Source of the DNA: Haliotis rubra
Lineage: Eukaryota
Direction of reading: 5' to 3'
DNA length: 64,000 nt
Assembly (NCBI RefSeq): GCF_003918875.1
Contig: NW_025766970.1
Location: 744,001 to 808,000 of the forward strand
Positions 15,101-58,000 of the stretch are shown here, piece by piece (within the stretch, counting starts at the first letter, position 1; each line of letters opens with the position of its first letter). The position numbers were made by a program, and so were the translations under genes. The notes beneath the pieces are model-generated. The model ran no database searches. It was not told the DNA's origin and saw only the letters and a list, made by a program, of their open reading frames with translations.

Positions 15101-18100
15101 TGTGTTCCAGGCGAGTCCAATGCGACACCACCCACAACAATGAACCAGTACAACTGTACGTTCCCCGCCATGATTGATGACTGGAGAGACAGGTTCCATG
15201 ACGGCTCCCTTGGTCAAACCGATCCACTGTTCCCGTTTGGATTTGTACAGGTTAGGCTATTCCTTTGTCTTCATATTTATGCAATGATGCTATCTTCTAG
15301 GAATTGTACATCAGGAAATGAATGTTTTTTTCCAGGCATCCACCCTCATAATTCCCGACAAAAGAATTAGAGTTAAATGTTGGCAATACCGGAAATATTT
15401 CCTCTTATCCGATCAGAAAGGTCCAGTTTAACCGTCTTTCTGATGAACTGTATAGTTCCGCACAGGAATAAAATGAATGCCCTTCACCGCTTTTAAACAT
15501 GAGATGATTTATCGTGATGTTACAAGTGTAAATTGGTAAGAAATGTTAAATGAAGAAAACAACCTGTCCCTTACATTAATAACACACTCATACATTCATA
15601 AGAAATATTTTCAGTCATACATCTGTGTGTACCGATATCACCTGTTATGTTACAACGCTTATCGGAAAGTGACCATTTTGGTCATTTACTTAAAATGATA
15701 TGAAGGCAAGAATTTTATGGATGTCAACTTCTTTATTTTGACAATACAGAAGCTGAAATCCATAAATTCTTGCCTTTATATGTATCACTTCTAAATGCCA
15801 TTCAGAGACTCAAATGATATGCAAATTATACATCCTTTGTTTACAAAGAAATACAGGGTCGGAATTGTTTGTTGGCTTTTCAGTCAGAATTTATCAAAGG
15901 GGATTTGGATAATTTCTGAGAGTGTTAGCACTATCCAATTAAGTGTTCACAATAGTGATAGGCAGTGTCTGACATGGCCATTGGATGGTGAAATGATTTG
16001 CAAAACCAAGCTGCCAACACACCTCTGCATCTTATGGTATTTTCTCGAATGTACAGCAGATCGTGCATCACACTTACCAAATGGGCAGAAGGTGTCCGAC
16101 ATTTACTCCTTATTTCCCTTTAATTTATTGCTGCGTGGAACATCTGACTGCAGTTTGTAACGTTGGGACTGATAAACAAAGTGACATCTTCGGACAAGGG
16201 TAGCTTCCATGTAACACAGGACTATAACGGGGTGACTGGTGGATTGGTAATAGGATCATGAAACGGAATTATAAAGCGTTTGTGACTAGTGTTTAAGAAT
16301 TATATTATATGAGGCTAACGCCTTTGTGTGTCGTGGTAAATATTCTGTATCAGACACCACTCGCTAAATGTAATATTAAACATAATGTCCACGTGAATGT
16401 GTATTCACTCACTCACTCCTTCCTTCCATTTTCTGTATGTGATTTTACCCTGAAATATGGGGATAAATTCTGAATTGTTTGCAGCTTGCTCCATGGAGAA
16501 ACACTGACGTCATTACAACAGGTTTCACAGACATTCGGTGGCACCAGACAGCTGACTACGGCTTCGTCCCTAACGCACGGATGAAGAACACCTTCATGGC
16601 AGTGGCCATGGACCTGCCGGATTTCTCGTCTCCTTGGCAAAGGTATCAGAAATAGTTTGTTTGTTGTTTAAAGCCACACTCTGACGGCGGTCTGTAAATA
16701 ATCGAGTCCGGACCAGACAATCCAGTGATCAACATCATGAACATCGATCTACGCAATATGGTTACGATGACATTTGTCAACCAAGTCAGTGAACCTGACC
16801 ACCTGATCCCGTTAGTAGCCTCTTACGATCCTGATCTTCACGGGTTTTTCAGAATAATTTAAAACCAAAATGACTTTGGTCTTTGATTTGTCCCTGCCAA
16901 TCTTTCTGGAAGTCTCTTTACACATATCTCTTGGGAATGAGACTTTACATGTAACAAACATGTACTTTCAGTATCCATCCCCGGGACAAGCAGGATGTGT
17001 CTATGCGTCTGTGTACAGCTGGACTTGCTGTGGCCTACAACCAAACTCAATACTCCACCCTCAGTGGTCCCTACCCTTCTAGTTTTACTATCTTGGCGCA
17101 GGAAGAATCCGTACAGATAACATATGACAAGGTTCTGGAAATTAGATCGAAATCAGGCTTTGAGGTCAGTGGCCATTGCTACTGCTATGTTTAAAAGTTG
17201 TGTCAACAAAACAATTGTTATGTTCTTTCTTCTATTTCCGTTGAGATTTTCTTTAGTTCTTATGTCGCTGGTCGTAGGTTTTTCCAGGGGTAGATAGCGT
17301 GAGTTTTTGTGCACTGTATAATGAAATGGAATCTTTAGTAAAATAGCATGTATTTCTGGTGACAAAGATGAGTGGCAGTATACATTATATCGGTTACGTT
17401 GTCAGTTTATTGCAAATATGTATCATTATTTAATTATTTAATATGACCGTGTATTGTTCAAATGATCTTAAAGGTTTTAGACATTTCGACTCCAAAGGCA
17501 ATATCTATGCACACACATTTAGATCGAAATAGAATCTGTTGTATGAAAACTCCGAGTTAAGATATTTTGAAATCATGGAAAGATGTGTAATAATGTTATA
17601 TGCAGTATCCGACAGCTTTTAGTTATTCAAAACTTAACTGACCCCTCTTCCAATTAAATTTTGCAAGGTTTTTCTTGCTAATGATCAAGTGTAGCAAATA
17701 TATATGAGCGGAGAAGTGCATTTCCTCAAACTCCAGAGACCATTTAACTCATTTTTCGAGCAAATCCGTGACTTACGAAGATTTTGTTACCACGTGTTTG
17801 TTCTGTTTTGATCTGTATACCCTGAAAATAAACTTGGGTCAATGACTGCAAATGTTTAGATATTTAAAGTGACAATCGCTCAAATCAGCTCGCGAAAGGT
17901 GAAGGATAAACTGTTCTAATCCAAGACCTTATGATTCTGTTTATTGTTTTTCTTTGCCTTCAGGTGACATGTGTCCCCGCCAACAGTTCATCAGGACCAC
18001 ATGACAATTCAGTGTGGTTCCCCTTGCCTATGACGTCACATGATAACACATCAGTTACCCTTAACTACAGCCAACTATGTCTTCGGTCTAGAGACATGGT

Positions 18101-20640: not shown

Positions 20641-23600
20641 ATGGCGGCTGAAATGGAATCAGTTGTACGGAAATTCATTTGGACCTTAATTTATGTGACA
20701 GCATTAGCAGCATATTCAGGAAGAGGTAATATTTAATGTTTTATAGAGCCTTCTGTGACTGCATCATATACAACATGTTTGACAACACACTGTGACTTCA
20801 AAGGTTTCATATTATTAAGTCTGTATCGTATGAAGGATGTATAACAACAACCATTTTAACTTTGAATTCATTTTAAAAATTACAACTGTGCCCCCGCATT
20901 AACTAGAAATACAAATGCTGAGTTGTTGGATTAAAATACATGTATGCAGTACTGGTACATGGAACAATGAATGTACCGGCCCACTAGAGCATTGTAAACC
21001 CTGTTAAACAGCCCATCTGTTGGTAGATTCAGATGTCTTGATTTACCATACAGATGTATTGTCCTTCACATCTCTTTTCCTCTTCAAATATCTGAGATTT
21101 TTGTTTCAGGGACCACGGCGCAAAAGCCATTTGCCTTTGCCAGTTACTATGGTAACCACATGGTTCTTCAAAAAGCTCCTCAAAAGACGAACATTTGGGG
21201 CTATGCTGCAAAGGAAGGGGAGTCAATCACTTTAAGCATTAGCGGTAAGGGTCAGGTGACTACAACGTCTTTTATTGGACCTATACCATCAACTCCTGTG
21301 TGGTCAGTTCAACTTCCTGCCATTGATGCTGGGGGCCCTTACAACATAACAGCGACATCTAGCGAGGGCAGCATCAACCTAACAGACGTGTTGTTTGGGG
21401 ATGTCTGGATATGTTCGGGTCAGAGCAACATGCAGTTTACAGTTTCCATGGTAAGTTGCATCAACATAGATATCGAATAGTAGTCTTGATTTACATGGAC
21501 TGCAGTCTGCCTGCTTCCTACTTCAACGAAATATCAACATGGACTAAATTCCTGGTCATAATGGAGACATCCTCCCATCTAACACACAACGTTTTCGCAA
21601 CGTTGTGGATTGGTAATGTCATGACACACTGTTGTCACAACATTAGTATTACGTCATTTTACAACGTTATGTCACAACGTAATACCAACGTTATAAATTT
21701 ACGTTGAGGAAACGTTATGCTTTGGGCTCCTCACAACGTCATAACAACGTTATAACAACGTTTCGTATAACTTGGTGTCACAGAGTTTTCTGTAAAACTT
21801 TTCACTTTGAGATTCTTTCTTCACTATTCAGCTACAGCTTCAGAAAACACACGACTAAAACAACATGCAAATTGACGAATAAACGTTGAAGTGAATTTCT
21901 GCTTTGTTTCCTAGTACTGTTAACTCCTGGGGAAACTAGTCAACTATTACCGTTAAATAGAAGGTTAAAGACAACGTAATAAACCTTAGCATCAAATAAC
22001 TTAACCTGATAGAGACGTAAAAATGACGTATCAAAACGTCAGGCCACAACGTTGTGACAACGTAAATGGGAGTCGACAGAATAACGTTGTAACAAGTACT
22101 AACAACGAAAGCATAATGTTGTGAACGTGTGAGCTGTGTTGGTCTCCGATCCTGAGACAGAGTTGCTATCCCTTTGTGCTTATAATCAACAAGTCTTTCT
22201 TTTACTTATGAAATTACTGCAGGTAGTTCTGAAACATGAATCAACGATTCGAGTAATAGTTTACAGTTGGGTCATATTAATTTTATATTAATTTGCCATA
22301 GCCCTTGTTCTCCAAACCCCTAAATCAGACTGACCTGTAACCGATGACTCTAGCTACAGCTAACTATTACTGATGTCTTGTGAGTGTGGATCAGCTCTAG
22401 GTGGTTGTAGCTGTTGTGTAAATCAGTTGCTTCTGACAGGCTTTGAACGCCACGGAAGAGGAGTTCGATGCATCTAACCATCCCAACATCCGGGTATTTA
22501 CAGTTGCCCTGGGAGGGTCGCCTTTTGAAGAATATGACTTGTTGGGTATCAGTGAACCCTGGTCTGTTCCTAATGCAGGTACACAAATGACATTGAGATT
22601 TCTTACGCATACTCAATATATCAACATTATTTAAACGTTCTCTTGATGCTCACAACACATTCATCTGTGACATTTTTTTACCACGTTCCTAACGAAAACG
22701 TTTTTTACGACCTCTGGTGGACATAACGAACTGTTTTTGGTCGTAACGAACTACAGTCATGACGAACTAAAACACGTGATTGTGATCCCTTTGAGGCCGT
22801 CATATTCGTATTTCCAATTGATGTCAATATTTTACATCTGTCGAGTTCTCTTCTGTTGTTCCTAGATTATGTCTCCTAAGTTCAAACACTTATTTATTTC
22901 TCTCTCGTCATCTTGCTTCATCAAGATAGCATTGGTGGCTCCCCTTGGTCGTACTTTTCGGCAGTGTGTTGGTTATATGGCAAGTACCTGTCGTCGCATC
23001 TCAAATACCCCATCGGCCTCATAGCATCATCATACGAAGGAACCCGAGTGGAGGCGTGGTCAGCTCCCAATGTTCTCAAGAAATGTGGTGTAACCGATGT
23101 AGCCGACATAAACGATGGTAGTGATGTTTCTGGTGTTGATCCAAATGCTGCCTCTGTCTTGTGGAATGCCATGATACGACCGTTCCTGAACATGACCATA
23201 TATGGAGCCATATGGTATCAAGGTCAGAGAAAAACGATTTCAAAGTTATCAAGGTTAGCCTATAAGTTTCCTTTTTGAAAGGTGTATATTCATGTCTTTA
23301 AATTAACTAAATCTCAACTACAGCATATGCAAGAAACACATGGGCAGTTTCATATGCACCGTCCACTACAATCGGCTCTGTTTCTAAAAGAGTCCTATAA
23401 ATATGTGTTCCAGGTGAGTCCAATGCTGCACCATCCAAGACAATGAACCAGTACAACTGTACGTTCCCCGCCATGATTGATGACTGGAGAGACAGATTCC
23501 ATGACGGCTCCCTTGGTGAAAGCGACCCACTGTTCCCGTTTGGATTTGTACAGGTTAGGGTATCTTCTTTGTCTTCCATATATTTTTGTACATCATGACA

Positions 23601-26600
23601 TGAATGTAACAAGAAGAATGTATGTTTCCAAGCATCGACGCTTAATATAATTCCCAGTCAGAGAAACCACTGGGCCCACTTCGGGTCAATGTTGGCAATG
23701 CTGAGTAATATTTCCTCAGAAAGGCCTCATTTAACCGTCTTTCAATAAATTGTACGCTGGAACAAAGTGAATGCCCTTCGCCATTTATAACACATGAAAT
23801 GATTTATCATGAAGTTATGCCATGCTTAAAACATATTGCTAAACAGACACTGTGCTCCGCTATCATTCATAAGAAATATTATATTTTGGGTGGCACTTGT
23901 CTATTGGCTTTCGTGCAAGAATTTGTTATAAGGGATCTAGACCAAAATCAAACTCTGCTGCTTGTAGTCTGTTCTCTGATCTAACGCAGTTTACTTTTTC
24001 TTGCAAGCATGGCGTCTGAAAACAAACTTTGAAACCGTTACTTAAGGGGAAAATCGTGTATCACAATCAAATGAACCGGCATTAACACCGCTTTTCTATT
24101 TATTTTTTTGCATATGACTGTAGTGACCAGGTAGACTAATAAATCAAGTGACGTCTTCCGATAAGGGTAGCGTAAAAAAGGACAACAACTCGCGCCACTG
24201 TCTAAAAATAATCATGTATGTAACATGTTAGAGAAACCTAATTACAAACCGTTTATGACTATTGTATCTAAGAATGACATCATATTATGATGTCAACGCT
24301 CTTGCGTGTGTAAAATCCTGTATAAGACACTCTCGATAAATGCATTGTTAAACGTAATGTCCATGTGAAATGTGTATTCACTCACTCGTTCCTTCTTCCT
24401 CAGCTTGCTCCATTTAGAGACAATGACACCATTACTACAGGCTACACAGACATTCGGTGGCACCAGACAGCTGACTATGGCTATGTCCCTAACGACAGAA
24501 TGAAGAACACCTTCATGTCGGTGGCCATGGACCTGCCGGATTTCTCGTCTCCTTGGCAAATGTATCAGAAATAGTTTAAACCCAGTATAGCACGTTTTTA
24601 AAAAGGAGAAATGCAAAACAACATATAATCAACATTATTTTACAACCGTTACTTCATTCTCTGTAAGCAAACCCACAGGCAATTTTGACTCGTCCCTGCC
24701 AGTCCTTGTGGAAGTTTCTTTGGCCATATCTTCTAGGAATGGGACTTTACATGTAACAATCAGAAAAAATACTGTGTGGTGTTCCATATACTTTCAGTAT
24801 CCATCCCCGGGACAAGCAGGATGTGTCTATGCGTCTGTGTACAGCTGGACTTGCTGTGGCCTACAACCAAACTCAGTACTCCACCCTCAATGGCCCCTAC
24901 CCTTCTAGTGTTACTGTGGGGGAAGATGGAACCGTACAGATAACATATGACAAGGTTCTGGAAATTAGATCGAAATCAGGCTTTGAGGTCAGTGGCCATT
25001 GCTACTTCATATGTTTAAAAGTTTTACTCAACAAAGCAGTTGTTACTTTCTTGCTTCTATATCCTTTGAGACGATCTGATTTTTGTTGAAGAGTGTTTTG
25101 TCAGAGGGGAGATGGTTCCTCACGTCGTGAGTATTTAATGCACAGCATAACGAAGGGGAATCCTTAGTAACATAGCATGCATTTATCATTAAGTGACAAA
25201 CATGAGTGGCGGTATATATCACATCGGTTAAAGTGGTGAGAGTATTATGCCATCAGTTTATGGCAAATATGTAAAATTCTGTCATTATTTAATATGTCTA
25301 TGTATTTTCCAAATGAACTTAAAGGTACACAAAATGTTTAGACATGTCCTCTCTAAAGGCAATGTTTATGCAGAAACATTAACATTGATATAGAATCTGT
25401 TGTAGGAAAACGACGACAAAAGATATTGGTTCTTAGCTTGCAGGTGTGAAAGTTATGGAAAGTCACTGTATCTAAGGTGATGCTGGTAACGCACGTTACC
25501 AACATCACAACATGGCGGCAGACAAGATCGCTTGGCGATTATTCCCTTCGAATAAGCAGTCTTCCACGTGTATACAATCAACATTAGTTAGCACACTGAT
25601 AAACTTTGATGGTGCGAATGCATTGAATGCACTGAATTTGCTTATTAATGTCTATGTGTTGAAAAATAAGCATTTTTAAAATGGCGCGAGGATGTCGGTA
25701 ACTCAAAGTCTGGATGTCGGTAACGTGCAATGAATGATGCTGGTAACACATACTGTCCTGCTTTAGTCGGTAAACAGAAATTGTCGGTAAATAGACATAC
25801 ACAGGAGATACTAATATCAGTTCTTATGTTTTACACAGATGTGTACTGCTGCGTAGATACATTAACAGTATGAGCGACTTTTTCTGTGCACCGGTGTGTT
25901 TATTAATAATAGGGTCCTGAGGTCACGGAGAAACATGAAGGTATATGTCAACACTTTTACACTGAAACAAATAACCAAAGAAATACTGGCAAAATATGCA
26001 GTCCCTAAAGTTAGGTTGACAGACCATATAACTTTATAAATTCAGCCCTACCCAATAAACGCACGCTGTAAAATGTACTTTAAACGTCAACATTGCAACG
26101 AAATCAACATGTCAAATATGTCCGAATTGAGGAGGGACAGAGAAAGAGCTCTCAGCGTAATGGACAATGGGCACACACATCTAAATCCGTTCAAGTTCAA
26201 CGAAACGCCACATAAATAGTGTGATTAAACACACCCTGCTTCAAGGCAAGCAACAACTCTCCAGTGCACAGAAAAAGTCGCCCATACTGTTAATGTAGCA
26301 GCAGTACACATCTGTGTAAAACATAAGAACTGATATTAGTATCTAGGGGTGGGCGATAATACCGGTTAACCGGTATATTGCAATTCGAACTTCACAATAC
26401 AATATATTGCGGTACACTTTTTAGCGAACCGGTTCACCCGATACGATCGGTAATTTCCGTGACCATCATCGGTAATTTTCCTGATGATGTATATCCTTAA
26501 TATTATTATACATTAATAGTTTTGAGAGTGTTTATTGGCCATATAATTGCATTTGCGTGACTTTTAAAGCATATAGATTGGTACCGGCATTCGTTGATAA

Positions 26601-27874
26601 ACAAACCAAAATGGGGGACGCCGCTGCAGACGCTTTTTCTCGAGTTGCAAACTTTAGAGTGAAGTCTTCAATTTGGAAACATTTTCAATTGATCTCTTGT
26701 ACAATCACATCTTAGCCCTGACAGTGACCAGTGGCATTGTTTCAAAAGAAAGGAAACAATAATTTCATTACCTTAACCCAGGTGTACACTTTCACAATAC
26801 GGAAATTTTGGCAATACTCAACCCTATTAGTATCTCCTTTGTATTTCTATTTACCGACAATTTCTGTTTACCGACTAAAGCAGGACAGTATGTGTTACCA
26901 GCATCATTCATTGTACGTTACCGACATCCAGACTTTGAGTTACCGACATCCTCGCGCCATTTTAAAAATGCATATTCTTCAACACATAGACATTTATAAG
27001 CAAATTCAGTGCATTCAGTGTATTCGCACCATCAAAGTTTATCAGTGTGCTAACTAATGTTGATTGTATACACGTGGAAGACTGCTTATTCGAAGGGAAT
27101 AATCGCCAAGCGATCTTGTCTGCCGCCATGTTGTGATGTTGGTAACGCACGTTACCAGCATCACCTTAGATACAGTGAAAGTGTGTAATGAGGTTATGAA
27201 CAGTTTCAGACAGTTTCCAATAGTTCACAACGTAACTGGCATTTTTGTCTATCAAAGTTTGCAAGGTTTTGTTTGCTAATGATCAAGTATGGCGATTGTG
27301 AGCGAAGGAAATTTCCAACATCAAGACATCATTTAACTCCTTTTTCGATCAAGTCCGTGACTTTTTCTTGCCACACGTTTATTCTGTATTGATCTGTATG
27401 CCCTACGATAATCAACCTGGGTCAATGATTGGCTTATGTTTTGATATTCAGACTGGCAATCGCCATACACGGCCTTTGCGAAACATTTTACCTCATGTTC
27501 ACAAGTTTGACAATGTTCATATCAACACATGCTTGTTTAGGAAGGACAAACTGTTTGGATCTTGTAATACTTAGTGATTCAGTTCTGTTCGCCTGTCTAT
27601 TGTTTTTGTTCGCCTTCAGGTGACATGTGTCCCCGCCAACAGTTCATCAGGACCAGATGACAATTCAGTGTGGTTCCCCTTGCCTATGACGTCACATGAC
27701 AACACGTCAGTGACTCTCAACTACAGCCAACTATGTCTTCGGTCTAGAGAAATGGTGGTGTCTGCCATACGTTATGCCTGGCGAGAGTCGCCGTGTCCCT
27801 TTAAACAGTGTGCCGTCTACAACAAGGATAGTGGCTACCCTGGGCCACCATTCATTCGATTTGTTAGGCAATAA
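20641..27874 (+). CDS. SIAE: SIAE-like sialate O-acetylesterase, copy 3 (8 exons, open frame)
   Basis: Exons 20641-20725, 21110-21450, 22440-22578, 22926-23222, 23414-23553, 24404-24561, 24798-24987, 27620-27874; closest to copy 2; YGGT changed to YEGT. Confidence 0.92.
21574..22138. mobile_element. Degenerate non-autonomous DNA element with many ACAACGTT subterminal repeats (EnSpm/CMC-like)
   Basis: Starts cccatctaacacacaacgtt; dense aacgtt repeats at both ends; absent from copy 2 intron 2. Confidence 0.5.
25464..27177. mobile_element. Non-autonomous long-TIR DNA transposon, CAC...GTG termini, 5-bp TSD (Transib/RAG-like)
   Basis: cactgtatctaaggtgatgctgg...ccagcatcaccttagatacagtg; TSD aaagt at 25459-25463 and 27178-27182; ~430-bp inverted arms; absent from copy 2 intron 7. 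Confidence 0.75.
26344..26826 (+). mobile_element. hAT deletion derivative nested in right arm of long-TIR element
   Basis: TAGGG...CCCTA termini, 8-bp TSD ttagtatc; retains MGDAAADAFSRVANFRVKSSIWKHF (BED zinc-finger start) from 26611. Confidence 0.8.
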
Positions 27875-34834: not shown

Positions 34835-34937
34835 TGTGACTGAGTATAGTTTTACGCTGCATGTTGGCAATGTTCCAGCAATATCACGGCGGGGGACACC
34901 AGGAATGGGCCTCACACATTGTACCCATGTAGGGAAT
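34835..34937 (-). mobile_element. SINE family B fragment
   Basis: Reverse complement of the 3' part of the element at 51640. Confidence 0.7.
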
Positions 34938-35990: not shown

Positions 35991-38900
35991 GTGTAGACCA
36001 AACAATGAACCTGAATACTGTGTCACATTTATGTATCTCAATATTCTGTGACCAGGTGAAGCCAATGCTGGGTCTCCAACAATGAACCAGTACAACTGTA
36101 CATTCCCCGCCATGATTGTCGACTGGAGAGACAGATTCCATCAAGCATCATTAGGACAAACATACCAAGTCTTTCCTTTTGGTTTTGTACAGGTAAGATT
36201 CAATACTACTATCACAAACACCACAACAATGCTTGAAGCGCAGCGTTAATAGCATGACAAAACATAACATGTTGCAGTGGTGATAGGTGTTCTATTACTC
36301 TAAGCATGCAAAGCATCCTATTTACATAATAGACATCAGACAACCCGTCCATGTGATGTTTGGTATGTTAAGATAACTGAAAATGCCTGTTGTCGATTTG
36401 ATAAAATTGTTCAATAAAAGCAATATAGCACTTAATGTCAGCTCCCTTCCCCTGATTTACTTGCCTGAACCAGGAATGTAAGCGGGCAGTAAAACAGCCT
36501 TAACAGTTATAAATTTTGATCAATGCCTAAAGATTGAGTGATAAAAATGTTCACAATTATTTTTACAATATACATGACTTCAATGACTTCATTATCGTCA
36601 ACGTTCAAGTAATGTTCCAGTAACGTGATCAACGTCACAAAATGCAAGGCGTGAGCAAAGCTTTGAAAAAGTACTTTGGTAGACAGATGGACGACATTTC
36701 CACATTTAACTTGTCCCATGCAATTTCTTTATTGGGCTTGTATTCATATATGTTCCCGTGTTCTATTTTTCAAATATATGATATCATCATTATGCGACAG
36801 TGCTTTATAAACACATCCTCATGATATAATCGGAACAATGGACTAAGTTTTCCGCAAAGATGTGTTATGACCAAGAGACTATGGAAATGTTTTGGTCGTT
36901 TTTATGATTGCTTAGAATGTAGGTCAAACTATTCCTTATAACACGCAAACGGTCGATACGTACAGGTATTGACACATTATCCTTGCATATTTCATCGCTG
37001 GTTTTGAGAATTATACATTCACACAAAATGTGAACAAGTTCCCTTAAATTTGGTTATCCTGGAAAGATTCCTACATATTTCTAATTTTCAAGATATCTAA
37101 ATATGTTTATAAACCTTGTTCAATGAAAAGACAATAAATCAAATTGATCAATATTCACAGTATTCATTATTTGTAAGTTCGGACAATATTATAGGCCCTT
37201 CTGTTGTATAAATGAACAATTAATTCTATTCATTGTCTGCATGAGATTTTACCCTAAAATCTGGAGATAAATTCTGAATTGTCTGCAGCTTGCTCCCTGG
37301 AGAGACAATGACACCATTACTACAGGCTTCACAGACATTCGGTGGCACCAGACAGCTGACTTCGGCTTCGTCCCTAACGACAGAATGAACAACACCTTCA
37401 TGGCGGTGGCCATGGATCTGCCTGACTTTACCTCTCCATTCACAGGGTATGACAGTATATTTTTGTACAGTACTTGTATTGTATATCAATGTATTCTGAC
37501 AAAAGAATTTCAAACTAATATTCAATCCTTCGGAAATGTCCATTTTATACTGTTGTATGTACTTTCAGTATCCATCCCAGGGACAAGCAGGATATAGGTC
37601 ATCGTCTGTGTACAGCTGCACTTGCGGTGGCCTACAACCAAAGTCAGTTTACTTTTAGCGACGGACCTTTTCCTCAATATTTCCTAGTCTCCCAAAACCA
37701 AAGAACAATGGAGATAGACTATGACGCAGCCCTCGACATTAGATCAACAAACGGCTTTGAGGTCAGAGACCACTGCTGTCTATTTAGTACAAATTATATT
37801 TTGAATGTTTTTAATTTTGTCAATGTCGTCCAGAAGCTATAGGGCCAAAACAAAGTTGGAAGAGTTGTTGAATTCCATCCAAACACTGAAGCATGGTTGG
37901 GTGTATAACGACTCCCTGGAGAGCACCTAGGGGGGCAGCTACAGATGATGCGCCAACGGACGTTTCTGACCTTCGTGAGGGTCCAGATGGAGAGTAGATC
38001 TGACTGGATGTTTGGAGATGATGGTGTGTGCGATTTTGGCGTGACCTGACCAATGCTAGTGTTCTTTTCACACAATAATTCACACACGTAAACTGGCAGC
38101 GTGTCGGAACGTTCAGTTTTCAAACAGCGGCAGATTAACACTGTACAAGAGGTGAAGTTTCAGACAACAGAAAGTTGATGTTAGTATCCGCATATTGTGA
38201 ATCCATAAGTCAGCTGTTTAAGTAAAGATGTTTAGATTTACAATGTATTGCAGTGAGAAGTGATTCTGGTGATAGTTCATACATTTAAGTCTGCGTCTGT
38301 ATACCTTCAGGTGACATGCAGAAATATTTCATCTCCGACCGAAGACTCAGTGTGGTTCCCCTTGCCTATTGCGTCACACGGATACGAATCAGTGACCTTC
38401 AACTTCAGCCAAATATGTCTGCAGTCTGAAAACAAGGTGATCTCTACAATACGCTATGCTTGGAGAGAGTCACCATGTCCCTTTAAACAGTGTGCAGTCC
38501 ACAACATTAACGGGGGCTACCCTGCGCCACCTTTTATCCAACGTATTCTCCATGGTATGCCAAATGTTAAAATTGTACAATAAAATATGCAAGGAATGAA
38601 AGGCTGACATATGTTTGTTTGTTACTTATACATATGTGATGAGAGGCTCAAAGTTTCTGAGCTCACAATAAATCAAGTATAGTACACCCTTCACAGTTTG
38701 CATGCATTGCGTGTAACACGTGCCCAGCTTACAGACTGCGTTTGATTCAGAACACAATCAGGTATAACATATTTCTGCAGGCCTCAAAGTGCCTAGATTG
38801 TATTCTCTGTTGATACTAGTCTCACGCGTCATGAAGCTTCTCAAACTGAGAGGGTTTAAGGAGTATTAAACGGTCCTTCCTCTGTCACTATCAAGAACAT

Positions 38901-41414: not shown

Positions 41415-44400
41415 ATGGAACGGACTGCCTGGCTAGTTCTCCTGATTGCCATCAGTTGGGTTGTACCGGCAGCTCATACAGCAGATGGTAGGTTTACCAT
41501 CATTATTAACACGTCTGGGTGAGCAACCGCACAAACGCGATTGAGCAATTTCCGGTTTCAATGTATGAATGCACTGCTTTGAAAGATGAAGGCTCTTATA
41601 CATGCCACTACAAATGAAACATTAAAACTTTTGGAACCTAAAGGATGTCAGCCCTGAATTATGTTTGAATTTCTTGATTTTAAATGATCCATTCCGAAAA
41701 GTTTTACGATTGCCTTTTTCACCAGATGGAATCTGTTTCGGAGGATAATCCAAACTCAATGAAAATCGGTCGATGTTAAGCCGTAGATATAGACCCCAGG
41801 ATGTTGTTTACATGTGTAGAACGGCAAGTAATGTAGCGGGTGTTAAAAGTGATTTGTTTTATTGACATACTTCTCTGTTACACCTCCTTCGTTCAGGCCA
41901 AATCAAACAATCACGTAACATTTTATCATTCATCCATTTCAGGGACAGGGGCGGTTAAACCTTTTTCCTTTGCCAGTTACTATGGTGACCACATGGTTCT
42001 TCAAAAGGCTCCCCAAAGGACAACTATATGGGGCTATGCTGCAAAGGAAGGGGAGACAATCACATTGACCATTAGTGGTAATGGTCAGGTGACTACAACG
42101 TCCTTTATAGGCCCTATCCTATCAACTCCTGTGTGGTCAGTTCAACTTCCTGCCATTGATGCCGGGGGCCCTTACAACATCACAGCGACATCTAGCGAGG
42201 GCAGCATCAATCTAACAGATGTGTTGTTTGGGGATGTCTGGATATGCTCGGGTCAGAGCAACATGCAGTTTACACTTTCCATGGTAAGTTGCATCAGAGG
42301 TTCGTGATGTTTGAGACTGATCTGACAAACCCATGAGGAATGAGATATCAATGTCCGAAGATTGCTTATTATTGTTTATTGTTTATAGTGGTTGTCACTT
42401 GAAACCAGTGAAAATCTTATATTGAATATTTGAAAGTCACAATCAATACAATTTAAAACTGTGTGAAATCTGTGTTTGGAATCTTTAAAGTGGTAACACA
42501 GTGGTGTATCTCCTGATTTTGGTATCATCCATGCAGGCCTTCAATGCTACGAAAGAGGTGGCAGAAGCCGCCAACTATCCCAACATCCGGGTGTTTACCG
42601 TTGCTCTGGGAGGGTCTCCGGTAGAGGAATATGATCTGCTGAACATCAGCCAACCTTGGTCTGTTCCGAGTGCAGGTAGAAGCAGCGGCTTCAGTGTTCA
42701 TCTTCATTAGAAGTCGTTATCTGTCAGCACCTTTCTAAACATATCATTGCCCGAAACATATTGTTTTAATAGGTTACCTTTGCTGTTGTCTTAAAGGGTG
42801 TCACGAGATCCATTCTTGCATGATTTCACTTATTATATATGAAACATAATATTCCTCCCATAAACTGACTATTCAGGTTGCACACCTCATACACAATGAT
42901 ATTCTGTGGACATTGTCCATCACAAGCTTCCTTGAGCTTTATACTGTGATTGTCAAAATAGGTAAGTATAGACTAACATTGAAAACTTTTACTGTGTTCA
43001 AATAACTGTGCATATTTCGTGCACTTTGATTGATACAAGGATGACACGAAGCACGTTCACGGTCACATGTTCTGAAGATGTAGTTTCAATGCTGGTGTTC
43101 CTGCCACAAAACGCTATGGCCACGAGTGGGGCGTTCCGATCTGTAGCTAGTGTGGTCACTCTGTGTTGTTTTCAAACCTTGGCACGAGATGGTCTATGGC
43201 CTCCACTACAAAAGAAATAAAGGTTGACCTGACTGGCGTGCTAAAACCTTGGCACAGATTGATACGCCAATGTCCATTCAAACCATCTTTGTGTTTTTAA
43301 CCTACAAATTGCAAAGTAAATGTCTAAAACAGTATTTTCCTGCTATCAAGCTACTATTGGCGGTCCGGACTGGTCTTACTTTTCGGGAGTATGTTGGTTA
43401 TATGGCAAGTACCTGTCGTCGCATCTCAAATACCCCATCGGCCTCATAGCATCATCATACGGAGGAACCCGAGTGGAAGCGTGGTCAGCTCCCAATGTCC
43501 TCAAGAAATGTGGTGTAAGCGAGGCTAAGGAAGTGTCGAGTGTGAACCCTAATGCTGCTTCTGTTCTGTGGAATGCCATGATGCGACCCTTCGTCAACAT
43601 GACCATATATGGAGCCCTCTGGTATCAAGGTACAAAACAGATTTTTTAACATAAATTAATTAGATTTTTATACGGTTGAAGGAATACATGTTAAAAATTT
43701 CCATTTCACATCTCATTGCTACCTTACAGAGAAGAAATGAATATGCATATGTTGATCCAATGTGTTCATGGAATCGAGGATATTATTTAAAGAGAAGGAG
43801 GTGAGTGTGTTTTGGATAGATCACTGTCAGGGCTTATACTACAGGAGAGTAACCTGGACTCTGAATCCAGGAGGCCACCTGATACAAGAACATACCAACG
43901 TCAAGGTTGTAGCACCCAGATATGAAAAACCTGAATCCATGTGACCATGTCACTATCGGTCGCAATGAAGAGAAACCATGGACCACGTGAAGACCAGGCA
44001 AAGAACTATAGAGTAACTATATGGAATGAATCAATAGTCCAACAGGACACAATGAATCAGTATATCACTCTTCTGTGTCCAGGAGAAGCCAGTGGATCAC
44101 AGAGCAACGTGGTCGATGACCCAAAAGAGTCAATGGAATACCTATAGACCGAACAATGAATTAGTGTGTGTTTTACCGTTTGCGAATATTTCAATATTCT
44201 GTGACCAGGTGAAGCCAATGCTCGGTCTCCAACAATGAACCAGTACAACTGTACGTTCCCCGCCATGATAGATGACTGGAGAGACAGGTTTCATCAAGCA
44301 TCAGGAGGACAAACAGACCCAGTCTTTCCTTTTGGATTTGTACAGGTGAGATACATTAATATTGTACAAGATACTTGAGGGTGGTGACAGGTCATAACAG

Positions 44401-46065
44401 TTTTGATCTATGTGCTGTTAAGCTCAGCGTTCACAGTTACATATATCCTAACAAAGACAACAGACGGTCAGTCTGTGTGAACTTCAACATGTTATTATAA
44501 CTGATATTTCTGTCGTCTATGATCTAATAATGTTCAGATATGGTCATATAGCCATCTATAAGTCCCCTCCATTGCTTTACGAACCAGAACTAGAAGTAAA
44601 AGAATAGTTGGAATCGGGCAATAGACATATCTAGCGATATCTTATGATTATTTGGTTTTGTCCCATTTATCTGTATTTTTTTAGAAGGTCAAACATTTCC
44701 TTGTAACACATAGGAGGTTGAGACATTCACACATTATTGTTGTATATTCATCAGGTGTTCTTTTAAATTACTGCCATTGTATACATGAACAGTTCATTTT
44801 AGCCACTGGTTGGACGTGATGAAGATTTTAATGTGAATTATGGGGATATAACGTCTGATATGTTTGTATGCAGCTTGCTCCATGGAGGGACAATGACACC
44901 ATTACTACAGGCTTCACAGATATTCGGTGGCACCAGACAGCTGACTACGGCTACGTCCCCAACGACAGGATGAAGAACACCTTCATGGCGGTGGCCATGG
45001 ATCTGCCTGACTTTACCTCTCCATACACAGGGTATATCGTTTTACTTGTTTAAAGTCTTGCAATTATCGTTAGTGTCTTTAAGAAACGTGCAGTTCACAC
45101 TGTTGTATGTACTTTCAGTGTCCATCCCCGTGACAAAGAGGATGTGTCTATGCGTCTGTGTACAGCTGGACTTGCTGTGGCCTACAACCAAAGTCAGTTT
45201 TCTGTACTCGACGGACCAATCCCTGGTCTGTTCATAATCTACACCGAACAAAGAACCATGGCGATAGAGTTTTACAAACCCCTTGATATCAGATCAACAA
45301 CAGGCTTTGAGGTCAGTGACAACTACTATTTCAGTTTGGGCTTGGTCAACACATTTCAGCTGAGCCAATGCTGGACCGGGGATTGAACCTGTAACCAGCT
45401 AGAAAGCTTAGAAATGTGATGTATCCAACCTCGCTACTGACTAAGCAACAAGGGGTTTTGATATACAATGTCCAGCGACATTTTGATGTATTTTGAAATT
45501 AGTTTTGCCCGGTAAACTTCCACTTTGATATATGTACATAACTAAACGTTAGGAATATTCTCAGTGTCCAGGTCAAGGATGAATCTGACTGGATGTTTGG
45601 AGATATAGTTGGTTTACAAGTAGGAGGATCATATGGTTGAGAAAAGAAAGTTGAGATTAATATCCACCTGCTGTGAATCAGTCGATACACGGGCTGTTTT
45701 AATACCAGATAATATGATTTACAATACATTGCAGTCGGCAAAGTGATCTGGTGATCATCTATAAATGTACGTTTGCGTCTATATAACTTAGGTGACATGC
45801 AGAAACAGTTCCTCTCCGTCCACGGATGCGTCAGAGTGGTTCCCCTTGCCTATTACGTCACATGACAACACATCAGTGACCCTCAACTACAGCCAAATAT
45901 GTCTGGAATCTGAAAACAAGGTTGTGTCTGCTATACGCTATGCTGGAGAGAGTCACCATGTCCCTTTAAACAGTGTGCAGTCTACAACAGCCAGAGTGGC
46001 TATCCTGCGCCACCGTTTATCGAAACTTTTGTTGATGATATGGCAAATGTTAAAATTGTGAAATA
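41415..46065 (+). CDS. SIAE: SIAE-like copy 6 (8 exons; 1-nt deletion in last exon alters C-terminus)
   Basis: Exons 41415-41487, 41943-42283, 42537-42675, 43351-43629, 44209-44345, 44874-45031, 45119-45311, 45792-46061 (46065 if frame restored); RYAW motif broken at ~45944. Confidence 0.85.
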
Positions 46066-51000: not shown

Positions 51001-52016
51001 CAGAACTCTTTAATTTCCCAGAAAATATTTCTGTACTCGGAAGTGCGAGTAGCAACCAATCACATTTATAAGTTAAACATTTTACCTCGAAAATGCATTT
51101 GATAATAAATCAAAATAAATAAAATGTTGACTCTCGGTGCAACAGTAGAGAGGAAGATGTAACAGGAGTATGTAAACCTAGTTGAAAGAAAAACGTGTTG
51201 CAACCATTGTAAGTACAGATATAACAGTAGAGTATAACCAAACCTGACCTAGCGCGACGTCTTGAGTCCCTGTCCGACATTTTGATTTAAGATGGGCTTA
51301 TTTCAATATTTGCAGCTGTAATGGGTGAATCAAAGGAGAAACATACCACCTGTAGACCAAACAGTGAACCAGATCATAGTGGAAGATGACTCTGAAAGAA
51401 CGAACGAAATGGTAAACAATTTAATATGTGTACCACTGTTCTGTGCCCAGGTGAAGCCAATGCCGGATCTCCAACAATGAACCAGTACAACTGTACGTTC
51501 CCCGCCATGATAGATGACTGGAGAGACAGGTTTCATCAAGCATCAGGAGGACAAACAGACCCAGTGTTTCCTTTTGGTTTTGTACAGGTATGATTCATCA
51601 CTACTGCTACTACAAACGCCACAACAATCCTTGGCGATGCGGGGCGGTGGGGTAGCCAAGTGGTTAAAGCATTCGCTTGTCACGCCGAAGACCCGGGTTC
51701 AATTTCCTACATGGGTACAATATTTGAAGATCATTTCTGGTATCCCCCACCGTGATATTGCTGGAATATTGCTAAAAGCAGCATTGAACTAAATTCACTC
51801 TTACTCTTACTCACCTTGACGATGCAATGCCACATATATTTCAAAGCAATTTGTTAATATTAACTACAGCAAAGGAACATTTCTGCTACAAATTCCCCTG
51901 ACAGAATAAGATAGGTAACACACAAACAGTAAATATGATCCTCAGTATGACATAACCATTACTGGAAAGTACTGATGTCAATGAGTAGTAATAGAGGATG
52001 TGTTTGTGTTTGTGTT

Positions 52017-52070
<54 letters not shown>

Positions 52071-55000: not shown

Positions 55001-58000
55001 ACCGAGTATTCACCGGACAACCCGCTTCAAAGCTGCGCAAACCTATTTTACTGCGCACGTGCTATGAGTGCAGCCCAGCTGTTGAAACAAGTGTTCCCCC
55101 GGAAAGTCGGGTGAAAATTAGTGAAACGTTTGACCTCCGATTTTGCGCGTTTTTTCATCGCATTATTTTTCAACTTTATAAGTTGAATTTGCATTTTTGA
55201 CGATTTGTTTCGGTAAGTCCATACCAAAAGGTATCAGAATCTGCAAAGTTGTGTTTTACGTTGCATGTGACCTTTAAGTCTTTGAGCACCGAGTTACATT
55301 TTTGCGTCAGCATCCAAATGCTGTGTTTCGTGTGCCGGCCCGAGAAGGGCAGGTAAGACAGCATGTCTCGTTTATTGACCATGTCCTTGTTGGTGCTGCA
55401 GTCGTCCAGGAGGAACAGCGACGACTCCCCTTTCAATATACCGTGATAAGCAGTCAACCAGTCCTGCAGACGCATTCCAGGATCCATCCTGTGCACGTCC
55501 AGGTCCGTCATCACCCACGCTCTCTCGGTGTACGTCTTGTTCACCCGCAACGTCCGGCATAGAATGACGATGTGATCGACGCAGTGTCATCGTCAACATG
55601 CTGTCGCAACCCATAGCTCACATCCTATCGAGTAAAACCAGGACGTCAAACGCGACGTTGCAGTTAGTGTCGGAATTCGACAGCATGGTCGACATCCTGC
55701 AAAATCTGCAGGCGCAATCCACGCTGATCATCCAAGTCTACCTCGGCGAACCACGGGTTGGGAACGTCGTAATCGTCAAAGGCATCAAACTCCAGTGGAC
55801 CCAGCAACACCAATACCATGTTTTCTCCGTTTACGTACTGGTGGGCATGGATGCGTTCACCAGCAGTGAGTCAACGTCACCGTGGAAAATCCGATATCGC
55901 TCTCGAACATTTTCCTGCACGATAACATACATCTGATGGGTTTTAAATGCACGGCCGAAACATTATCCGAAAACTAATTAAAATTTCTCTAATATATCAT
56001 GACAAACGTGACTCCGCAAGCCACCATCATGTTCTCCGATCTCGGGGACACGCTAGGATTCGACGAACTCGGTACGGAAAACGCCTTGTACGTCCTGCAC
56101 TTACAAAACAACGTGTACCAACGTCGAGAAGTCATCGTCGAATTGAACTGGATCATCAATATCGTCCTGACCTACCCCTATCTCGTCATGGATCAGGATC
56201 ATAATATCCTCGAAATCAAAAACAATGGGTTTCTACTGGGGAATTTTATTCTGTTTCATAAAAAAGGGAATGTATGCATCACCATTACCAGATCAAACGG
56301 GTTATATGCTAGTCCCTCACTCGGAAGACACAGCGAAATGGCTCGATTTAAAACGATATAGTGAAGTCCCAGACTCGTGGATCACTGTGATACCAGGTTC
56401 TACCCTTCATATCGATGTTGTTCTTGGAAATGTCTCCGGACAACGGGTGGGACTTCTGGCTGGGGTAGACATATGCTGGCACGATTGCCATAAAAATCAG
56501 CTCAGATTGCACAAAAAAGTACCATCAGGCAGTCAATGCGTCAGCAGAGTGGACACGGGCCTCGTGGTCGCCGGCATTGGACTCGGGGGTGCCGGCATCG
56601 GCTTGTTGTCGACCATCGTGGCCCCACCCATCGTCTTCGAGTTGAAAATAGCCGTCGGGGTATCGGGGCTGGCGGGAGTAGCCCTTAAATTCATTTCACG
56701 TCGTCTTTAACGGAAGGCCTTAAAACACGACGAGATCAGGGTTCTGGCCAAAGCCAAACTGAACACGATCAACGATGGCGTCTCGTTGGTGCTTACGGAC
56801 AGTAAAATATCCGAAGAAGAATTCCGCCTGATTTTAGCTGAACTCGCCAGTACCACCGCATGAAGGAAGAGATTCGAACCAAGAGTCGGAAAACCGCCGA
56901 CTTCAGCGAAGACGAGAAAAAAAAGCTCATAGAACAAGGCGGACAACAGATCATTCAAGCCTTCCTGACCAAGAACGTAAAAGATTCACGTTCAACTGCT
57001 TCGTAGATGTCATCATGACGTAGTTTTCATAAAGTCGTCGCTGAATATAACGGCTGCGTTTAAAAAAAAATTAAATGGGTTTGTTGGTCAGGATAAATCC
57101 AGCCCATACCCCGTTGCTAAGCTCGGTCGCCATCGTGGCGACAAATTTCCCAGGTCAGTCCTCCTCCGAGGAAGAATCACCCGACACTGATTTCCCAGTA
57201 CACCTCGACTCAGACTTGCAAATGTTTCGTCGCTACCCCCGACTCGAACTACAAACACTCGATTACGAGTCAAACATTCTAACCATCACACTGGCGAGCT
57301 GGCTGATACTTCAGTGCTCGAAACTTTGAGTCTAGGCTGACGGCACATCGAAGGATGCCTCTCGATAGACCATCGCCGTTTTTAAGAAGGGGGGCTGGGG
57401 AACTTATTTCATAAGAATAAGCCTCTAAGCCGCATCCGCGGCACCCCCCACCTCTATTACTACTCAATGTACTAATCATTTAAGTGGTCAATCTCTAAAG
57501 ATATACACATTTGTTCATATAGTTTAATTCACTAAAAGAACATTCTAACTTTAGCAGAAGTTTCCCAGCTCTGATTATTGTAATGCGTTTGACCAAATTT
57601 TTGGAAACATATTTCGTCCCTTCCATTCTGTATTTGGACACTTGGAACTTTTTTCGCTTTGCGTCATGAACCTCTGAATTTGTATTAGAATATTTCTTTG
57701 AGACACAATTCTGATGTTTGTCTGCAGCTTGCTCCATGGAGAGACAATGACACCATTACTACAGGCTTCACAGATATTCGGTGGCACCAGACAGCTGACT
57801 ACGGCTTCGTCCCTAACGACAGAATGAACAACACCTTCATGGCGGTGGCCTTGGACCTGCCGGACTTTACCTCTCCATTCACAGGGTATGACAGTATATT
57901 TTTGTACAGTACTGGTATATCAATGTATTCTGACAAAGGAATTTCAAACTAATATTCAATCCTTCGGAAATGTCCATTTTATACTGTTGTATGTACTTTC

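What the first reader, a model, noticed from the sequence alone, without database searches (positions are those of the whole stretch)
51984..57464. Endogenous Polinton/adintovirus-like element inside a host intron, reduced to packaging and membrane-protein genes
Seen: AGTAGT...ACTACT termini, imperfect TIRs, caatg TSD, and a compact intronless block with a packaging ATPase, three small co-directional ORFs and a divergent GasderminX-like gene. Known: Polintons/Mavericks are ~15-20 kb, start with AG/AGT repeats and encode pPolB, integrase, protease, ATPase and capsids. Inference: this 5.5 kb copy (~4.4 kb without the nested Kolobok) lost replication, integration and capsid genes but kept both ends. 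It is either a decayed provirus or a non-autonomous satellite-like form mobilised in trans, and points to a possibly undescribed virus lineage in this host.
Basis: partly seen in the sequence, partly recalled or inferred. Interest (0 to 1): 0.82.

Follow-up and report, generated by a model that had tools for sequence, protein, structure and literature searches.

The report
Decayed short Polinton in an intron
A 5.5-kb dead remnant of a virus-like Maverick/Polinton transposon sits in an intron of a sialic-acid esterase gene, keeping both ends but only a broken DNA-packaging ATPase gene, a broken membrane-protein gene and a few small reading frames; such fossils are common in invertebrate genomes, so it is largely ordinary.

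Summary
The structure is real. The element spans 51984-57464 and has the Maverick/Polinton end motif 5'-(AGT)2//(ACT)2-3'. Its ends share a perfect 14-nt inverted repeat, then about 100 nt of 82-84% inverted repeat. A flush 5-bp direct repeat flanks it. It lies in a GT-AG intron of a sialic acid acetylesterase-like gene.

The minus-strand gene is an A32-type packaging ATPase. Its pieces miss Pfam, but relatives at 48-69% identity match Pox_A32. It is dead: the P-loop is gone and a 1,047-bp TTAA-flanked, Kolobok-type transposon splits it.

The divergent gene is not gasdermin-like. It belongs to a large unnamed family of ~200-aa helical-hairpin membrane proteins. The family's nearest viral matches are uncharacterised proteins of invertebrate iridescent viruses.

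No trace of polymerase, integrase, protease or capsid was found.

A second partial copy at 59152-59935 comes from a host tandem duplication, not a new insertion.

Verdict: a decayed, non-autonomous Maverick/Polinton-type fossil. Whether it inserted as a short element or was deleted in place cannot be settled here, because genome-wide copies could not be examined. Interest is modest.

The parts
51979..51983 (.). Left copy of the target-site duplication (CAATG)
   Evidence: Identical 5-mer flush with both termini. It reads as a 6-mer only if the last T of the right terminus is counted as target.
51984..52163 (.). Left terminal inverted repeat, beginning (AGT)2
   Evidence: 14-nt perfect terminal repeat, then arms of 82-84% complementarity.
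51999..52077 (.). (TG)n microsatellite inside the left TIR, absent from the right arm
   Evidence: Tandem Repeats Finder: period 2, 40 copies; alignment of the two ends.
52593..52724 (-). Small reading frame g6, 43 codons, Cys-rich, unknown function
   Evidence: the ORF listing. An AT-rich (85%) stretch lies directly upstream of the ATG. No Pfam match.
52874..53098 (-). Small reading frame g5, 74 codons as it stands, unknown function
   Evidence: the ORF listing. AT-rich upstream stretch with a repeated 15-18-nt motif. No Pfam match.
53162..53410 (-). Small reading frame g4, 82 codons, open from ATG to stop, basic middle and a moderately hydrophobic C-terminal part
   Evidence: the ORF listing. 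No Pfam match. Maximum hydropathy 1.29, below the usual transmembrane threshold.
53343..53847 (-). Reading frame g3 (outer bounds). It appears broken, because reading continues in other frames. Unknown function.
   Evidence: Overlapping ORF pieces in three frames. No Pfam match. With no relatives, the number of breaks is not established.
54035..55586 (-). A32-type (FtsK-HerA superfamily) packaging ATPase gene, recognisable part, broken. Breaks: one nested-transposon insertion; loss of about the first 37 profile positions including the Walker A P-loop; the frame is closed by stops there (at least 2).
   Evidence: A 103-codon piece is 48% identical to P0001, which matches Pfam Pox_A32 at 30.8 bits against a cut-off of 22.8. 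9 of 10 full-length relatives match Pox_A32, up to 73 bits. A profile of 30 relatives matches positions 38-140 (137.9 bits) and 140-200 (56.5 bits) of 223. No GxxxxGK[ST] in any frame.
54227..55273 (.). Nested non-autonomous TIR transposon, Kolobok-compatible. TTAA at 54223-54226 and 55274-55277.
   Evidence: 24-nt inverted repeat, 92%. The termini AG...CT fit the 5'-RR..YY-3' plus TTAA rule for Kolobok (PMC9587614). No long ORF. G+C 39%.
55664..55932 (-). Small reading frame g1 upstream of the ATPase (outer bounds), apparently broken, unknown function
   Evidence: Translations in three frames. No Pfam or PHROG match. No match to ATPase relatives.
55933..55998 (.). AT-rich (70%) intergenic stretch between the two divergent gene sets
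55999..56361 (+). Reading frame g7, 120 codons, open from ATG to stop, unknown function
   Evidence: the ORF listing. No Pfam or PHROG match. No match to any protein fetched. The single-sequence AF2 model is unusable, pLDDT 31.9.
56306..57006 (+). Gene g8, a member of an unnamed family of ~200-aa 2-TM helical-hairpin proteins, broken. Breaks: one in-frame stop and one frameshift. The first ~45 profile positions are not matched.
   Evidence: Word search hits P0003 and P0004. The family has 477 hits. Pieces are 55-73% identical to relatives. The profile matches 3 pieces in 2 frames, positions 46-208 of 212, 155.6 bits. Clear hydrophobic segment.
57343..57464 (.). Right terminal inverted repeat, ending (ACT)2
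57465..57469 (.). Right copy of the target-site duplication (CAATG)
59152..59935 (.). Second, partial copy of the element's right end (last third of g8 through the right TIR), made by a host tandem duplication
   Evidence: Third occurrence of the terminal 14-mer. The block 56791-59033 is repeated at 59152-61368. Identity is 94-95% over the element part, intron flank, exon and downstream alike. Same flank and same exon follow.
51451..51587 (+). Host exon upstream of the element
   Evidence: AG acceptor and GT donor. The block is conserved at 81-93% in four paralogues in the window.
57728..57885 (+). Host exon downstream of the element (sialic acid acetylesterase-like)
   Evidence: PDB 8f9q 'Sialic acid acetylesterase', E 1.7e-14, residues 321-361. 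AG/GT borders. Conserved in paralogues.

Best explanation
This is a dead endogenous copy of a Maverick/Polinton-type (adintovirus-like) element. It lacks the polymerase, integrase, protease and capsid genes.

Inferred: it was integrated into an intron of a sialic acid acetylesterase-like gene by a retrovirus-type integrase. That integrase was its own or a relative's. It recognises the (AGT)2 termini and makes a staggered cut, which left the short target duplication.

Shown: since then it has only decayed.
- The packaging ATPase lost its P-loop and was split by a Kolobok-type TTAA transposon.
- The 2-TM membrane-protein gene acquired a stop and a frameshift.
- A microsatellite grew inside the left TIR.
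- The two TIR arms drifted to 82-84% identity.
- A host tandem duplication copied its right 670 bp together with two host exons.

It does nothing today. It is passive intron content, spliced out with the intron.
For: - The end motif 5'-(AGT)2//(ACT)2-3' with TIRs and a flush direct repeat is the commonest Maverick end motif (PMC8097293).
- The ATPase belongs to an A32-type clade.
- The ATPase profile is matched on both sides of the nested element, meeting at the same profile position. The P-loop is absent.
- The 2-TM gene matches in 3 pieces and 2 frames.
- No Pfam hit to pPolB, rve, adenain or capsid in any ORF of 40 aa or more.
- The two right-end copies are 94-95% identical over element and host parts alike. 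Each carries a frameshift the other lacks, so decay continued after the duplication.
- The intron is 6,140 bp here against about 0.5-1.1 kb in paralogues.
- Polinton-like regions are very abundant in bivalve genomes (bioRxiv 10.1101/2025.04.19.649669). One ATPase relative is from Mytilus coruscus.
Against: - The perfect direct repeat is 5 bp, not the canonical 6.
- None of the genes that define the family's autonomy is present, even as a fragment.
- No truncated gene marks a deletion junction, and the divergent intergenic stretch looks native.
- No full-length relative with the same termini could be examined.
- The small reading frames have no known counterparts.
Confidence: 0.7

Rival explanations
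1. It is a copy of a natively short (about 4.4 kb), non-autonomous, satellite-like derivative family of Polintons. That family would keep only the termini, the ATPase, small proteins and the 2-TM gene, and would rely on full-length relatives for integration and packaging. This copy would have inserted at that size and then decayed.
For: - Both ends and the target duplication are intact.
- No gene stump marks a deletion junction, and every reading frame has its own AT-rich upstream stretch.
- Deriving it from the vertebrate Maverick gene order would need at least two separate large deletions (PMC8097293).
- Close ATPase relatives sit on contigs of only 4.7-7.5 kb. This is suggestive and nothing more.
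Against: - No second independent copy was seen. The only other copy in the window is a host duplication.
- Short contigs may simply be assembly fragments.
- Non-autonomous Polintons are rarely reported (PMC3014272).
Confidence: 0.25
2. It is a fragment of another large DNA virus, either iridovirus-like (Nucleocytoviricota) or a polinton-like virus, and the inverted repeats belong to that virus or are coincidental.
For: - Pfam Pox_A32 also covers ATPases of the Nucleocytoviricota.
- The best viral fold matches of the 2-TM family are invertebrate iridescent virus proteins, E 2e-7 to 8e-6.
Against: - The Maverick-specific end motif, the TIRs and a flush target duplication bound a 5.5-kb unit (PMC8097293).
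- The ATPase relatives are about 200-220 aa and highly multicopy in Mb-scale eukaryotic contigs.
Confidence: 0.04

Closest known systems
Maverick/Polinton elements with 5'-(AGT)2//(ACT)2-3' ends (vertebrate Mavericks, PMC8097293; Kapitonov and Jurka 2006 as cited there)
   Same: Identical 6-nt end motif, TIRs within the reported range of 46-1,447 bp, a short target duplication, intronless genes on both strands, and an A32-type ATPase followed by small co-directional ORFs (compare atp-pm-pz).
   Different: It is 5.5 kb against 12.7-24.6 kb. It has no ppolb, int, pro, MCP or mcp. The perfect target duplication is 5 bp rather than 6. The genes are broken.
Adintoviruses and their degraded endogenous relics (PMC8502044)
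   Same: An animal-genome relic of a polinton-class virus, with a packaging ATPase and an accessory membrane-protein gene.
   Different: The accessory gene is not GasderminX: there is no match to the gasdermin C-terminal domain. No hexon, penton, adenain, PolB or integrase remnants are present.
Polinton/PLV-like viral regions of bivalve genomes (bioRxiv 10.1101/2025.04.19.649669)
   Same: Abundant, mostly degraded integrated elements of the same broad class. One ATPase relative comes from the mussel Mytilus coruscus.
   Different: The host of this window was not identified. The paper's regions were called on marker genes (capsid, polymerase) that this copy lacks.
Uncharacterised ~215-275-aa proteins of invertebrate iridescent viruses (BFVD A0A068QKD3, S6DF61, A0A5B8RH66)
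   Same: They share the fold of the g8 family, a long helical hairpin with two hydrophobic helices at the tip, at 23-27% identity and E 2e-7 to 8e-6.
   Different: The match was made with the intact relative P0003, not with the broken window gene. The function is unknown on both sides.
Kolobok superfamily (PMC9587614)
   Same: The nested insert has the TTAA duplication and 5'-RR..YY-3' termini.
   Different: It has no transposase (it is non-autonomous), and no comparison with an autonomous Kolobok was possible.

Membership tests
Maverick/Polinton (adintovirus-like) element | Terminal inverted repeats | tested here: met
   14 nt perfect, plus about 100 nt at 82-84%.
Maverick/Polinton (adintovirus-like) element | Conserved end motif 5'-(AGT)2//(ACT)2-3' or (AG)3//(CT)3 | tested here: met
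   AGTAGT at 51984-51989 and ACTACT at 57459-57464. Motif as defined in PMC8097293.
Maverick/Polinton (adintovirus-like) element | 6-bp target-site duplication | tested here: inconclusive
   The perfect flush repeat is 5 bp. It is 6 bp only if the terminal T is assigned to the target.
Maverick/Polinton (adintovirus-like) element | [quoted passage not shown] | tested here: not met
   No Pfam match in any ORF of 40 aa or more. There is no room for it in 5.5 kb.
Maverick/Polinton (adintovirus-like) element | Retrovirus-like integrase | tested here: not met
   No Pfam match.
Maverick/Polinton (adintovirus-like) element | Major and minor jelly-roll capsid proteins and adenain-like protease | tested here: not met
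   No Pfam match. The small ORFs are too short for a major capsid protein. Their folds could not be tested.
Maverick/Polinton (adintovirus-like) element | A32-type (FtsK-HerA) packaging ATPase | tested here: met
   Met through relatives: 9 of 10 full-length relatives match PF04665, and the profile match is 137.9 + 56.5 bits. The window's own pieces give no direct Pfam match.
A32-type ATPase, as a working enzyme | Walker A P-loop GxxxxGK[ST] | tested here: not met
   Present in 23 of 30 relatives, absent from every frame here.
A32-type ATPase, as a working enzyme | Walker B (hydrophobic run followed by DD) | tested here: met
   The invariant DD columns are shared with P0001 and P0002.
Adintovirus GasderminX | Homology to the gasdermin C-terminal regulatory domain | tested here: not met
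   No Pfam gasdermin match for the pieces or for relatives. The family profile against PDB sequences finds nothing. Foldseek of the pLDDT-84.7 model against PDB finds no gasdermin, best E 0.09.
Adintovirus GasderminX | pX-like C-terminal domain | not testable with these tools
   No model or named comparator for pX came back from any search.
Unnamed ~200-aa 2-TM helical-hairpin family (P0003 and relatives) | Profile match across the hydrophobic hairpin and the C-terminal helices | tested here: met
   Positions 46-208 of 212, 155.6 bits. Pieces are 55-73% identical to relatives.
SLATT 2-TM effector domain / dynamin-like 'paddle' hairpin | Sequence or fold match | tested here: inconclusive
   BFVD SLATT proteins match only at E 0.06-0.4. 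The PADLOC LeoBC model matches 4 relatives at E 3.5e-5 to 4e-4, and does not match the window piece. No Pfam SLATT match.
Kolobok (nested insert) | TTAA target duplication and 5'-RR..YY-3' termini | tested here: met
   rule from PMC9587614.
Kolobok (nested insert) | Kolobok DDD/E transposase, or TIR similarity to an autonomous Kolobok | not testable with these tools
   The insert has no long ORF, and no transposon library was at hand.

The most novel reading that the evidence does not exclude
The element represents a family of short (about 4-5 kb), TIR-bounded Polinton derivatives. The family would keep a packaging ATPase, a few small proteins and a 2-TM membrane protein shared with invertebrate iridescent viruses, and would spread as a satellite of full-length Polintons or adintovirus-like viruses.
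Probability: 0.2. Interest if true: 0.7.

Novelty: new member of a known kind. Interest (0 to 1): 0.3.

Why it matters
On its own this is one more fossil of a very common class of integrated virus-like elements. Three things give it modest value.

1. It shows the (AGT)2 end motif, described for vertebrate Mavericks, on a short element whose ATPase clade includes a mussel sequence.
2. It links a very large, unnamed and unannotated family of ~200-aa membrane-hairpin proteins to a Polinton-type element and to invertebrate iridescent viruses. That family deserves a description of its own.
3. If other short copies with different flanks exist, it would document a satellite-like way of life for Polinton derivatives in animals.

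Tried and rejected
- Direct Pfam and PHROG scans of every single-frame piece gave nothing usable.
- PDB sequence searches with the ATPase piece and its profile gave nothing.
- The single-sequence AF2 model of the 120-codon ORF had pLDDT 31.9, so no fold search was run on it.
- An empty-site test against the same intron of paralogues failed, because the introns are too diverged.
- ARAGORN and Rfam found nothing in the tRNA-like stretch of the left flank.
- Three cluster look-ups for source names gave only one named relative, from Mytilus coruscus. The host therefore stays unidentified.
- The gasdermin reading was rejected.
- The reading as an iridovirus fragment was considered and set aside because of the Maverick termini and the target duplication.
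- Hydropathy does not support calling the small ORFs membrane proteins.
- Host exons were searched singly, by reference.
Full report
**The observation**

The element spans 51984-57464 (5,481 bp). It begins AGTAGT and ends ACTACT.
- The first and last 14 nt are perfect inverted copies. That 14-mer occurs three times in the window against 0.35 expected by chance, and none of 100 shuffles reaches three.
- Inside the ends, two further arm pairs align: 61 nt at 82% and 25 nt at 84%.
- A (TG)40 microsatellite at 51999-52077 interrupts the left arm only.
- CAATG lies flush against both termini. A 6-bp duplication can be read only if the last T of the right end is assigned to the target.
- G+C is 46-49% inside the element and about 40% around it.

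**Host context**

- The exon to the right (57728-57885) matches solved sialic acid acetylesterases, 8f9q at E 1.7e-14.
- It and the exon to the left (about 51451-51587) have AG/GT borders.
- Both exons recur in the same order in at least four more paralogues in the window.
- The intron between them is 0.5-1.1 kb in the paralogues and 6,140 bp here. Without the element and one target copy it would be 654 bp.
- The paralogue introns are too diverged to show an empty site.
- Exons were searched one at a time by reference. The joined spliced model was left out.

**The ATPase**

- Pfam and PHROGs find nothing in the window's own pieces.
- A word search with the 103-codon single-frame piece found P0001 (48% identity, E 2.6e-22). 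P0001 matches Pfam Pox_A32 above the curated cut-off.
- A profile of that alignment found 838 representatives at E <= 1e-3 among 1.84 billion proteins.
- Nine of ten full-length relatives (200-309 aa) match Pox_A32, up to 73 bits. One is from Mytilus coruscus.
- A profile of 30 full-length relatives matches positions 38-140 on one side of the nested transposon (137.9 bits) and 140-200 on the other (56.5 bits). The insertion therefore split the gene without loss.
- The first ~37 positions are not found in any frame, and there is no GxxxxGK[ST].
- Breaks counted: one transposon insertion, loss of the P-loop segment, and at least two stops closing the frame there.

**The nested transposon**

- It spans 54227-55273 (1,047 bp) and has 24-nt TIRs.
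- It has TTAA on both sides and AG...CT termini. TTAA plus 5'-RR..YY-3' is the stated signature of Kolobok, as against piggyBac (PMC9587614).
- It has no transposase, and no second copy lies in the window.
- Its bounds are given as those of an element. They necessarily coincide with one break of the ATPase gene.

**The divergent gene**

Two reading frames run rightward from 55999.
- The first (120 codons, open) has no relatives among anything fetched. It folds to nothing usable, pLDDT 31.9.
- The second (outer bounds 56306-57006) belongs to a very large unnamed family of ~200-aa proteins. There are 477 hits, some clusters hold up to 178 near-identical members on Mb-scale contigs, and none has a Pfam domain or a name.
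- The family profile is matched by three pieces in two frames, positions 46-208 of 212, 155.6 bits. That amounts to one in-frame stop and one frameshift.
- An AF2 model of the intact relative P0003 (70-sequence alignment, pLDDT 84.7) is a long helical hairpin. Two hydrophobic helices form its tip, and two further helices follow.
- The family profile against PDB sequences finds nothing. Foldseek against PDB gives only generic coiled coils, best E 0.09, and no gasdermin.
- Against viral models, the significant matches are uncharacterised proteins of invertebrate iridescent viruses, E 2e-7 to 8e-6 at 23-27% identity. SLATT 2-TM proteins of giant viruses appear only at E 0.06-0.4.
- Four relatives weakly match the membrane-hairpin part of the PADLOC LeoBC model.
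- GasderminX, as defined in PMC8502044, is a gasdermin C-terminal domain plus a pX-like tail. That reading is therefore not supported.
- Inferred function: a membrane-inserted, oligomerising hairpin.

**The small reading frames**

- One lies before the ATPase and four after it, all co-directional. Lengths are 43-135 codons. Two are open as they stand and two look frame-broken.
- None has a Pfam match.
- Each ATG is preceded by a 68-85% AT stretch. Three of them end in a similar TA-rich motif directly before the ATG, and a 15-18-nt motif recurs in these stretches.
- Only the family gene has a clear transmembrane segment.
- No ORF of 40 aa or more anywhere in the element matches polymerase, integrase, protease or capsid families.

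**The second copy**

- The third 14-mer, at 59922-59935, led to a partial copy at 59152-59935. This copy runs from the last third of the family gene to the right terminus.
- It is followed by the same CAATG, the same flank and the same exon.
- The block 56791-59033 is repeated at 59152-61368.
- Identity is 94-95% in the element part, intron flank, exon and downstream sequence alike.
- This is one host tandem duplication after the insertion, not a second integration.
- Each copy has a frameshift in the family gene that the other lacks. Part of the decay is therefore younger than the duplication.

**Comparison with what is known**

- Intact vertebrate Mavericks are 12.7-24.6 kb. They have TIRs of 46-1,447 bp, 6-bp duplications and the end motif (AGT)2//(ACT)2. 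Their modules are ppolb-atp-pm-pz and int-mcp-pw-MCP-pro, and most copies are degraded (PMC8097293).
- This element shares the ends and the atp-plus-small-ORFs arrangement, and nothing else.
- Bivalve genomes hold over 100,000 Polinton/PLV-like regions (bioRxiv 10.1101/2025.04.19.649669).
- The host of this window remains unidentified.

**Verdict**

This is a decayed, non-autonomous Maverick/Polinton-type fossil, a new member of a known kind. Two questions cannot be decided without other copies: whether it inserted short or was deleted in place, and whether short copies form a family.

- I did not look up or fetch DNA around the relatives' genes. Such contigs could be viruses or proviruses of animals. 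The step is referred.
- To form single-frame references for the search tools, I worked out in my reasoning where some reading-frame pieces end. Those references appear in the tool calls.
- My first two notebook entries also give outer bounds of homology blocks that abut the nested transposon.
- This amounts to locating some breaks. I stopped, deleted nothing, and list no break places in this report beyond the bounds of the nested transposon.

Noticed in passing
window 1-64000 (exon blocks such as 15135-15252, 23410-23555, 36030-36235, 44197-44364, 51425-51633; and 16466-16633, 24401-24552, 37270-37610, 44860-45145, 57707-58029, 60150-60447): The window is a tandem array of at least five sialic acid acetylesterase-like gene copies on the + strand. 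Their exons are 75-95% identical and their introns unalignable. One exon copy at 566-728 lies on the opposite strand.
   Followed up: partly
window 56791-59033 and 59152-61368: A tandem duplication of about 2.3 kb (94-95% identity) copies the element's right end plus host exons. The host gene therefore carries duplicated exons. About 118 bp (59034-59151) between the units is not part of the repeat.
   Followed up: partly
window 59540-59680: A unit of about 45 bp is present three times in the second copy of the element's right subterminal region, but only once in the first copy (57150-57200).
   Followed up: no
window 51640-51790, and 34838-34937 on the other strand: A stretch with tRNA-like A and B box look (possibly a tRNA-derived SINE) lies in the intron just left of the element and recurs elsewhere. 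ARAGORN and Rfam call nothing there.
   Followed up: partly
window 25463-25816 and 26825-27178: A 354-bp inverted repeat at 97% identity bounds a unit of about 1.7 kb. It is probably a young foldback or long-TIR transposon.
   Followed up: no
window 3623-4251: A block of internal tandem repeats, with units about 120-150 bp apart and 78-89% identical.
   Followed up: no
proteins P0003-P0122 (family of the window gene at 56306-57006): A very large, unnamed family of ~200-aa proteins without a Pfam domain. Some forms are 300-350 aa, with a C-terminal extension. The family is highly multicopy in Mb-scale eukaryotic contigs, and also appears on 1-2-kb contigs that look like transcripts. It has fold relatives in invertebrate iridescent viruses.
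   Followed up: partly
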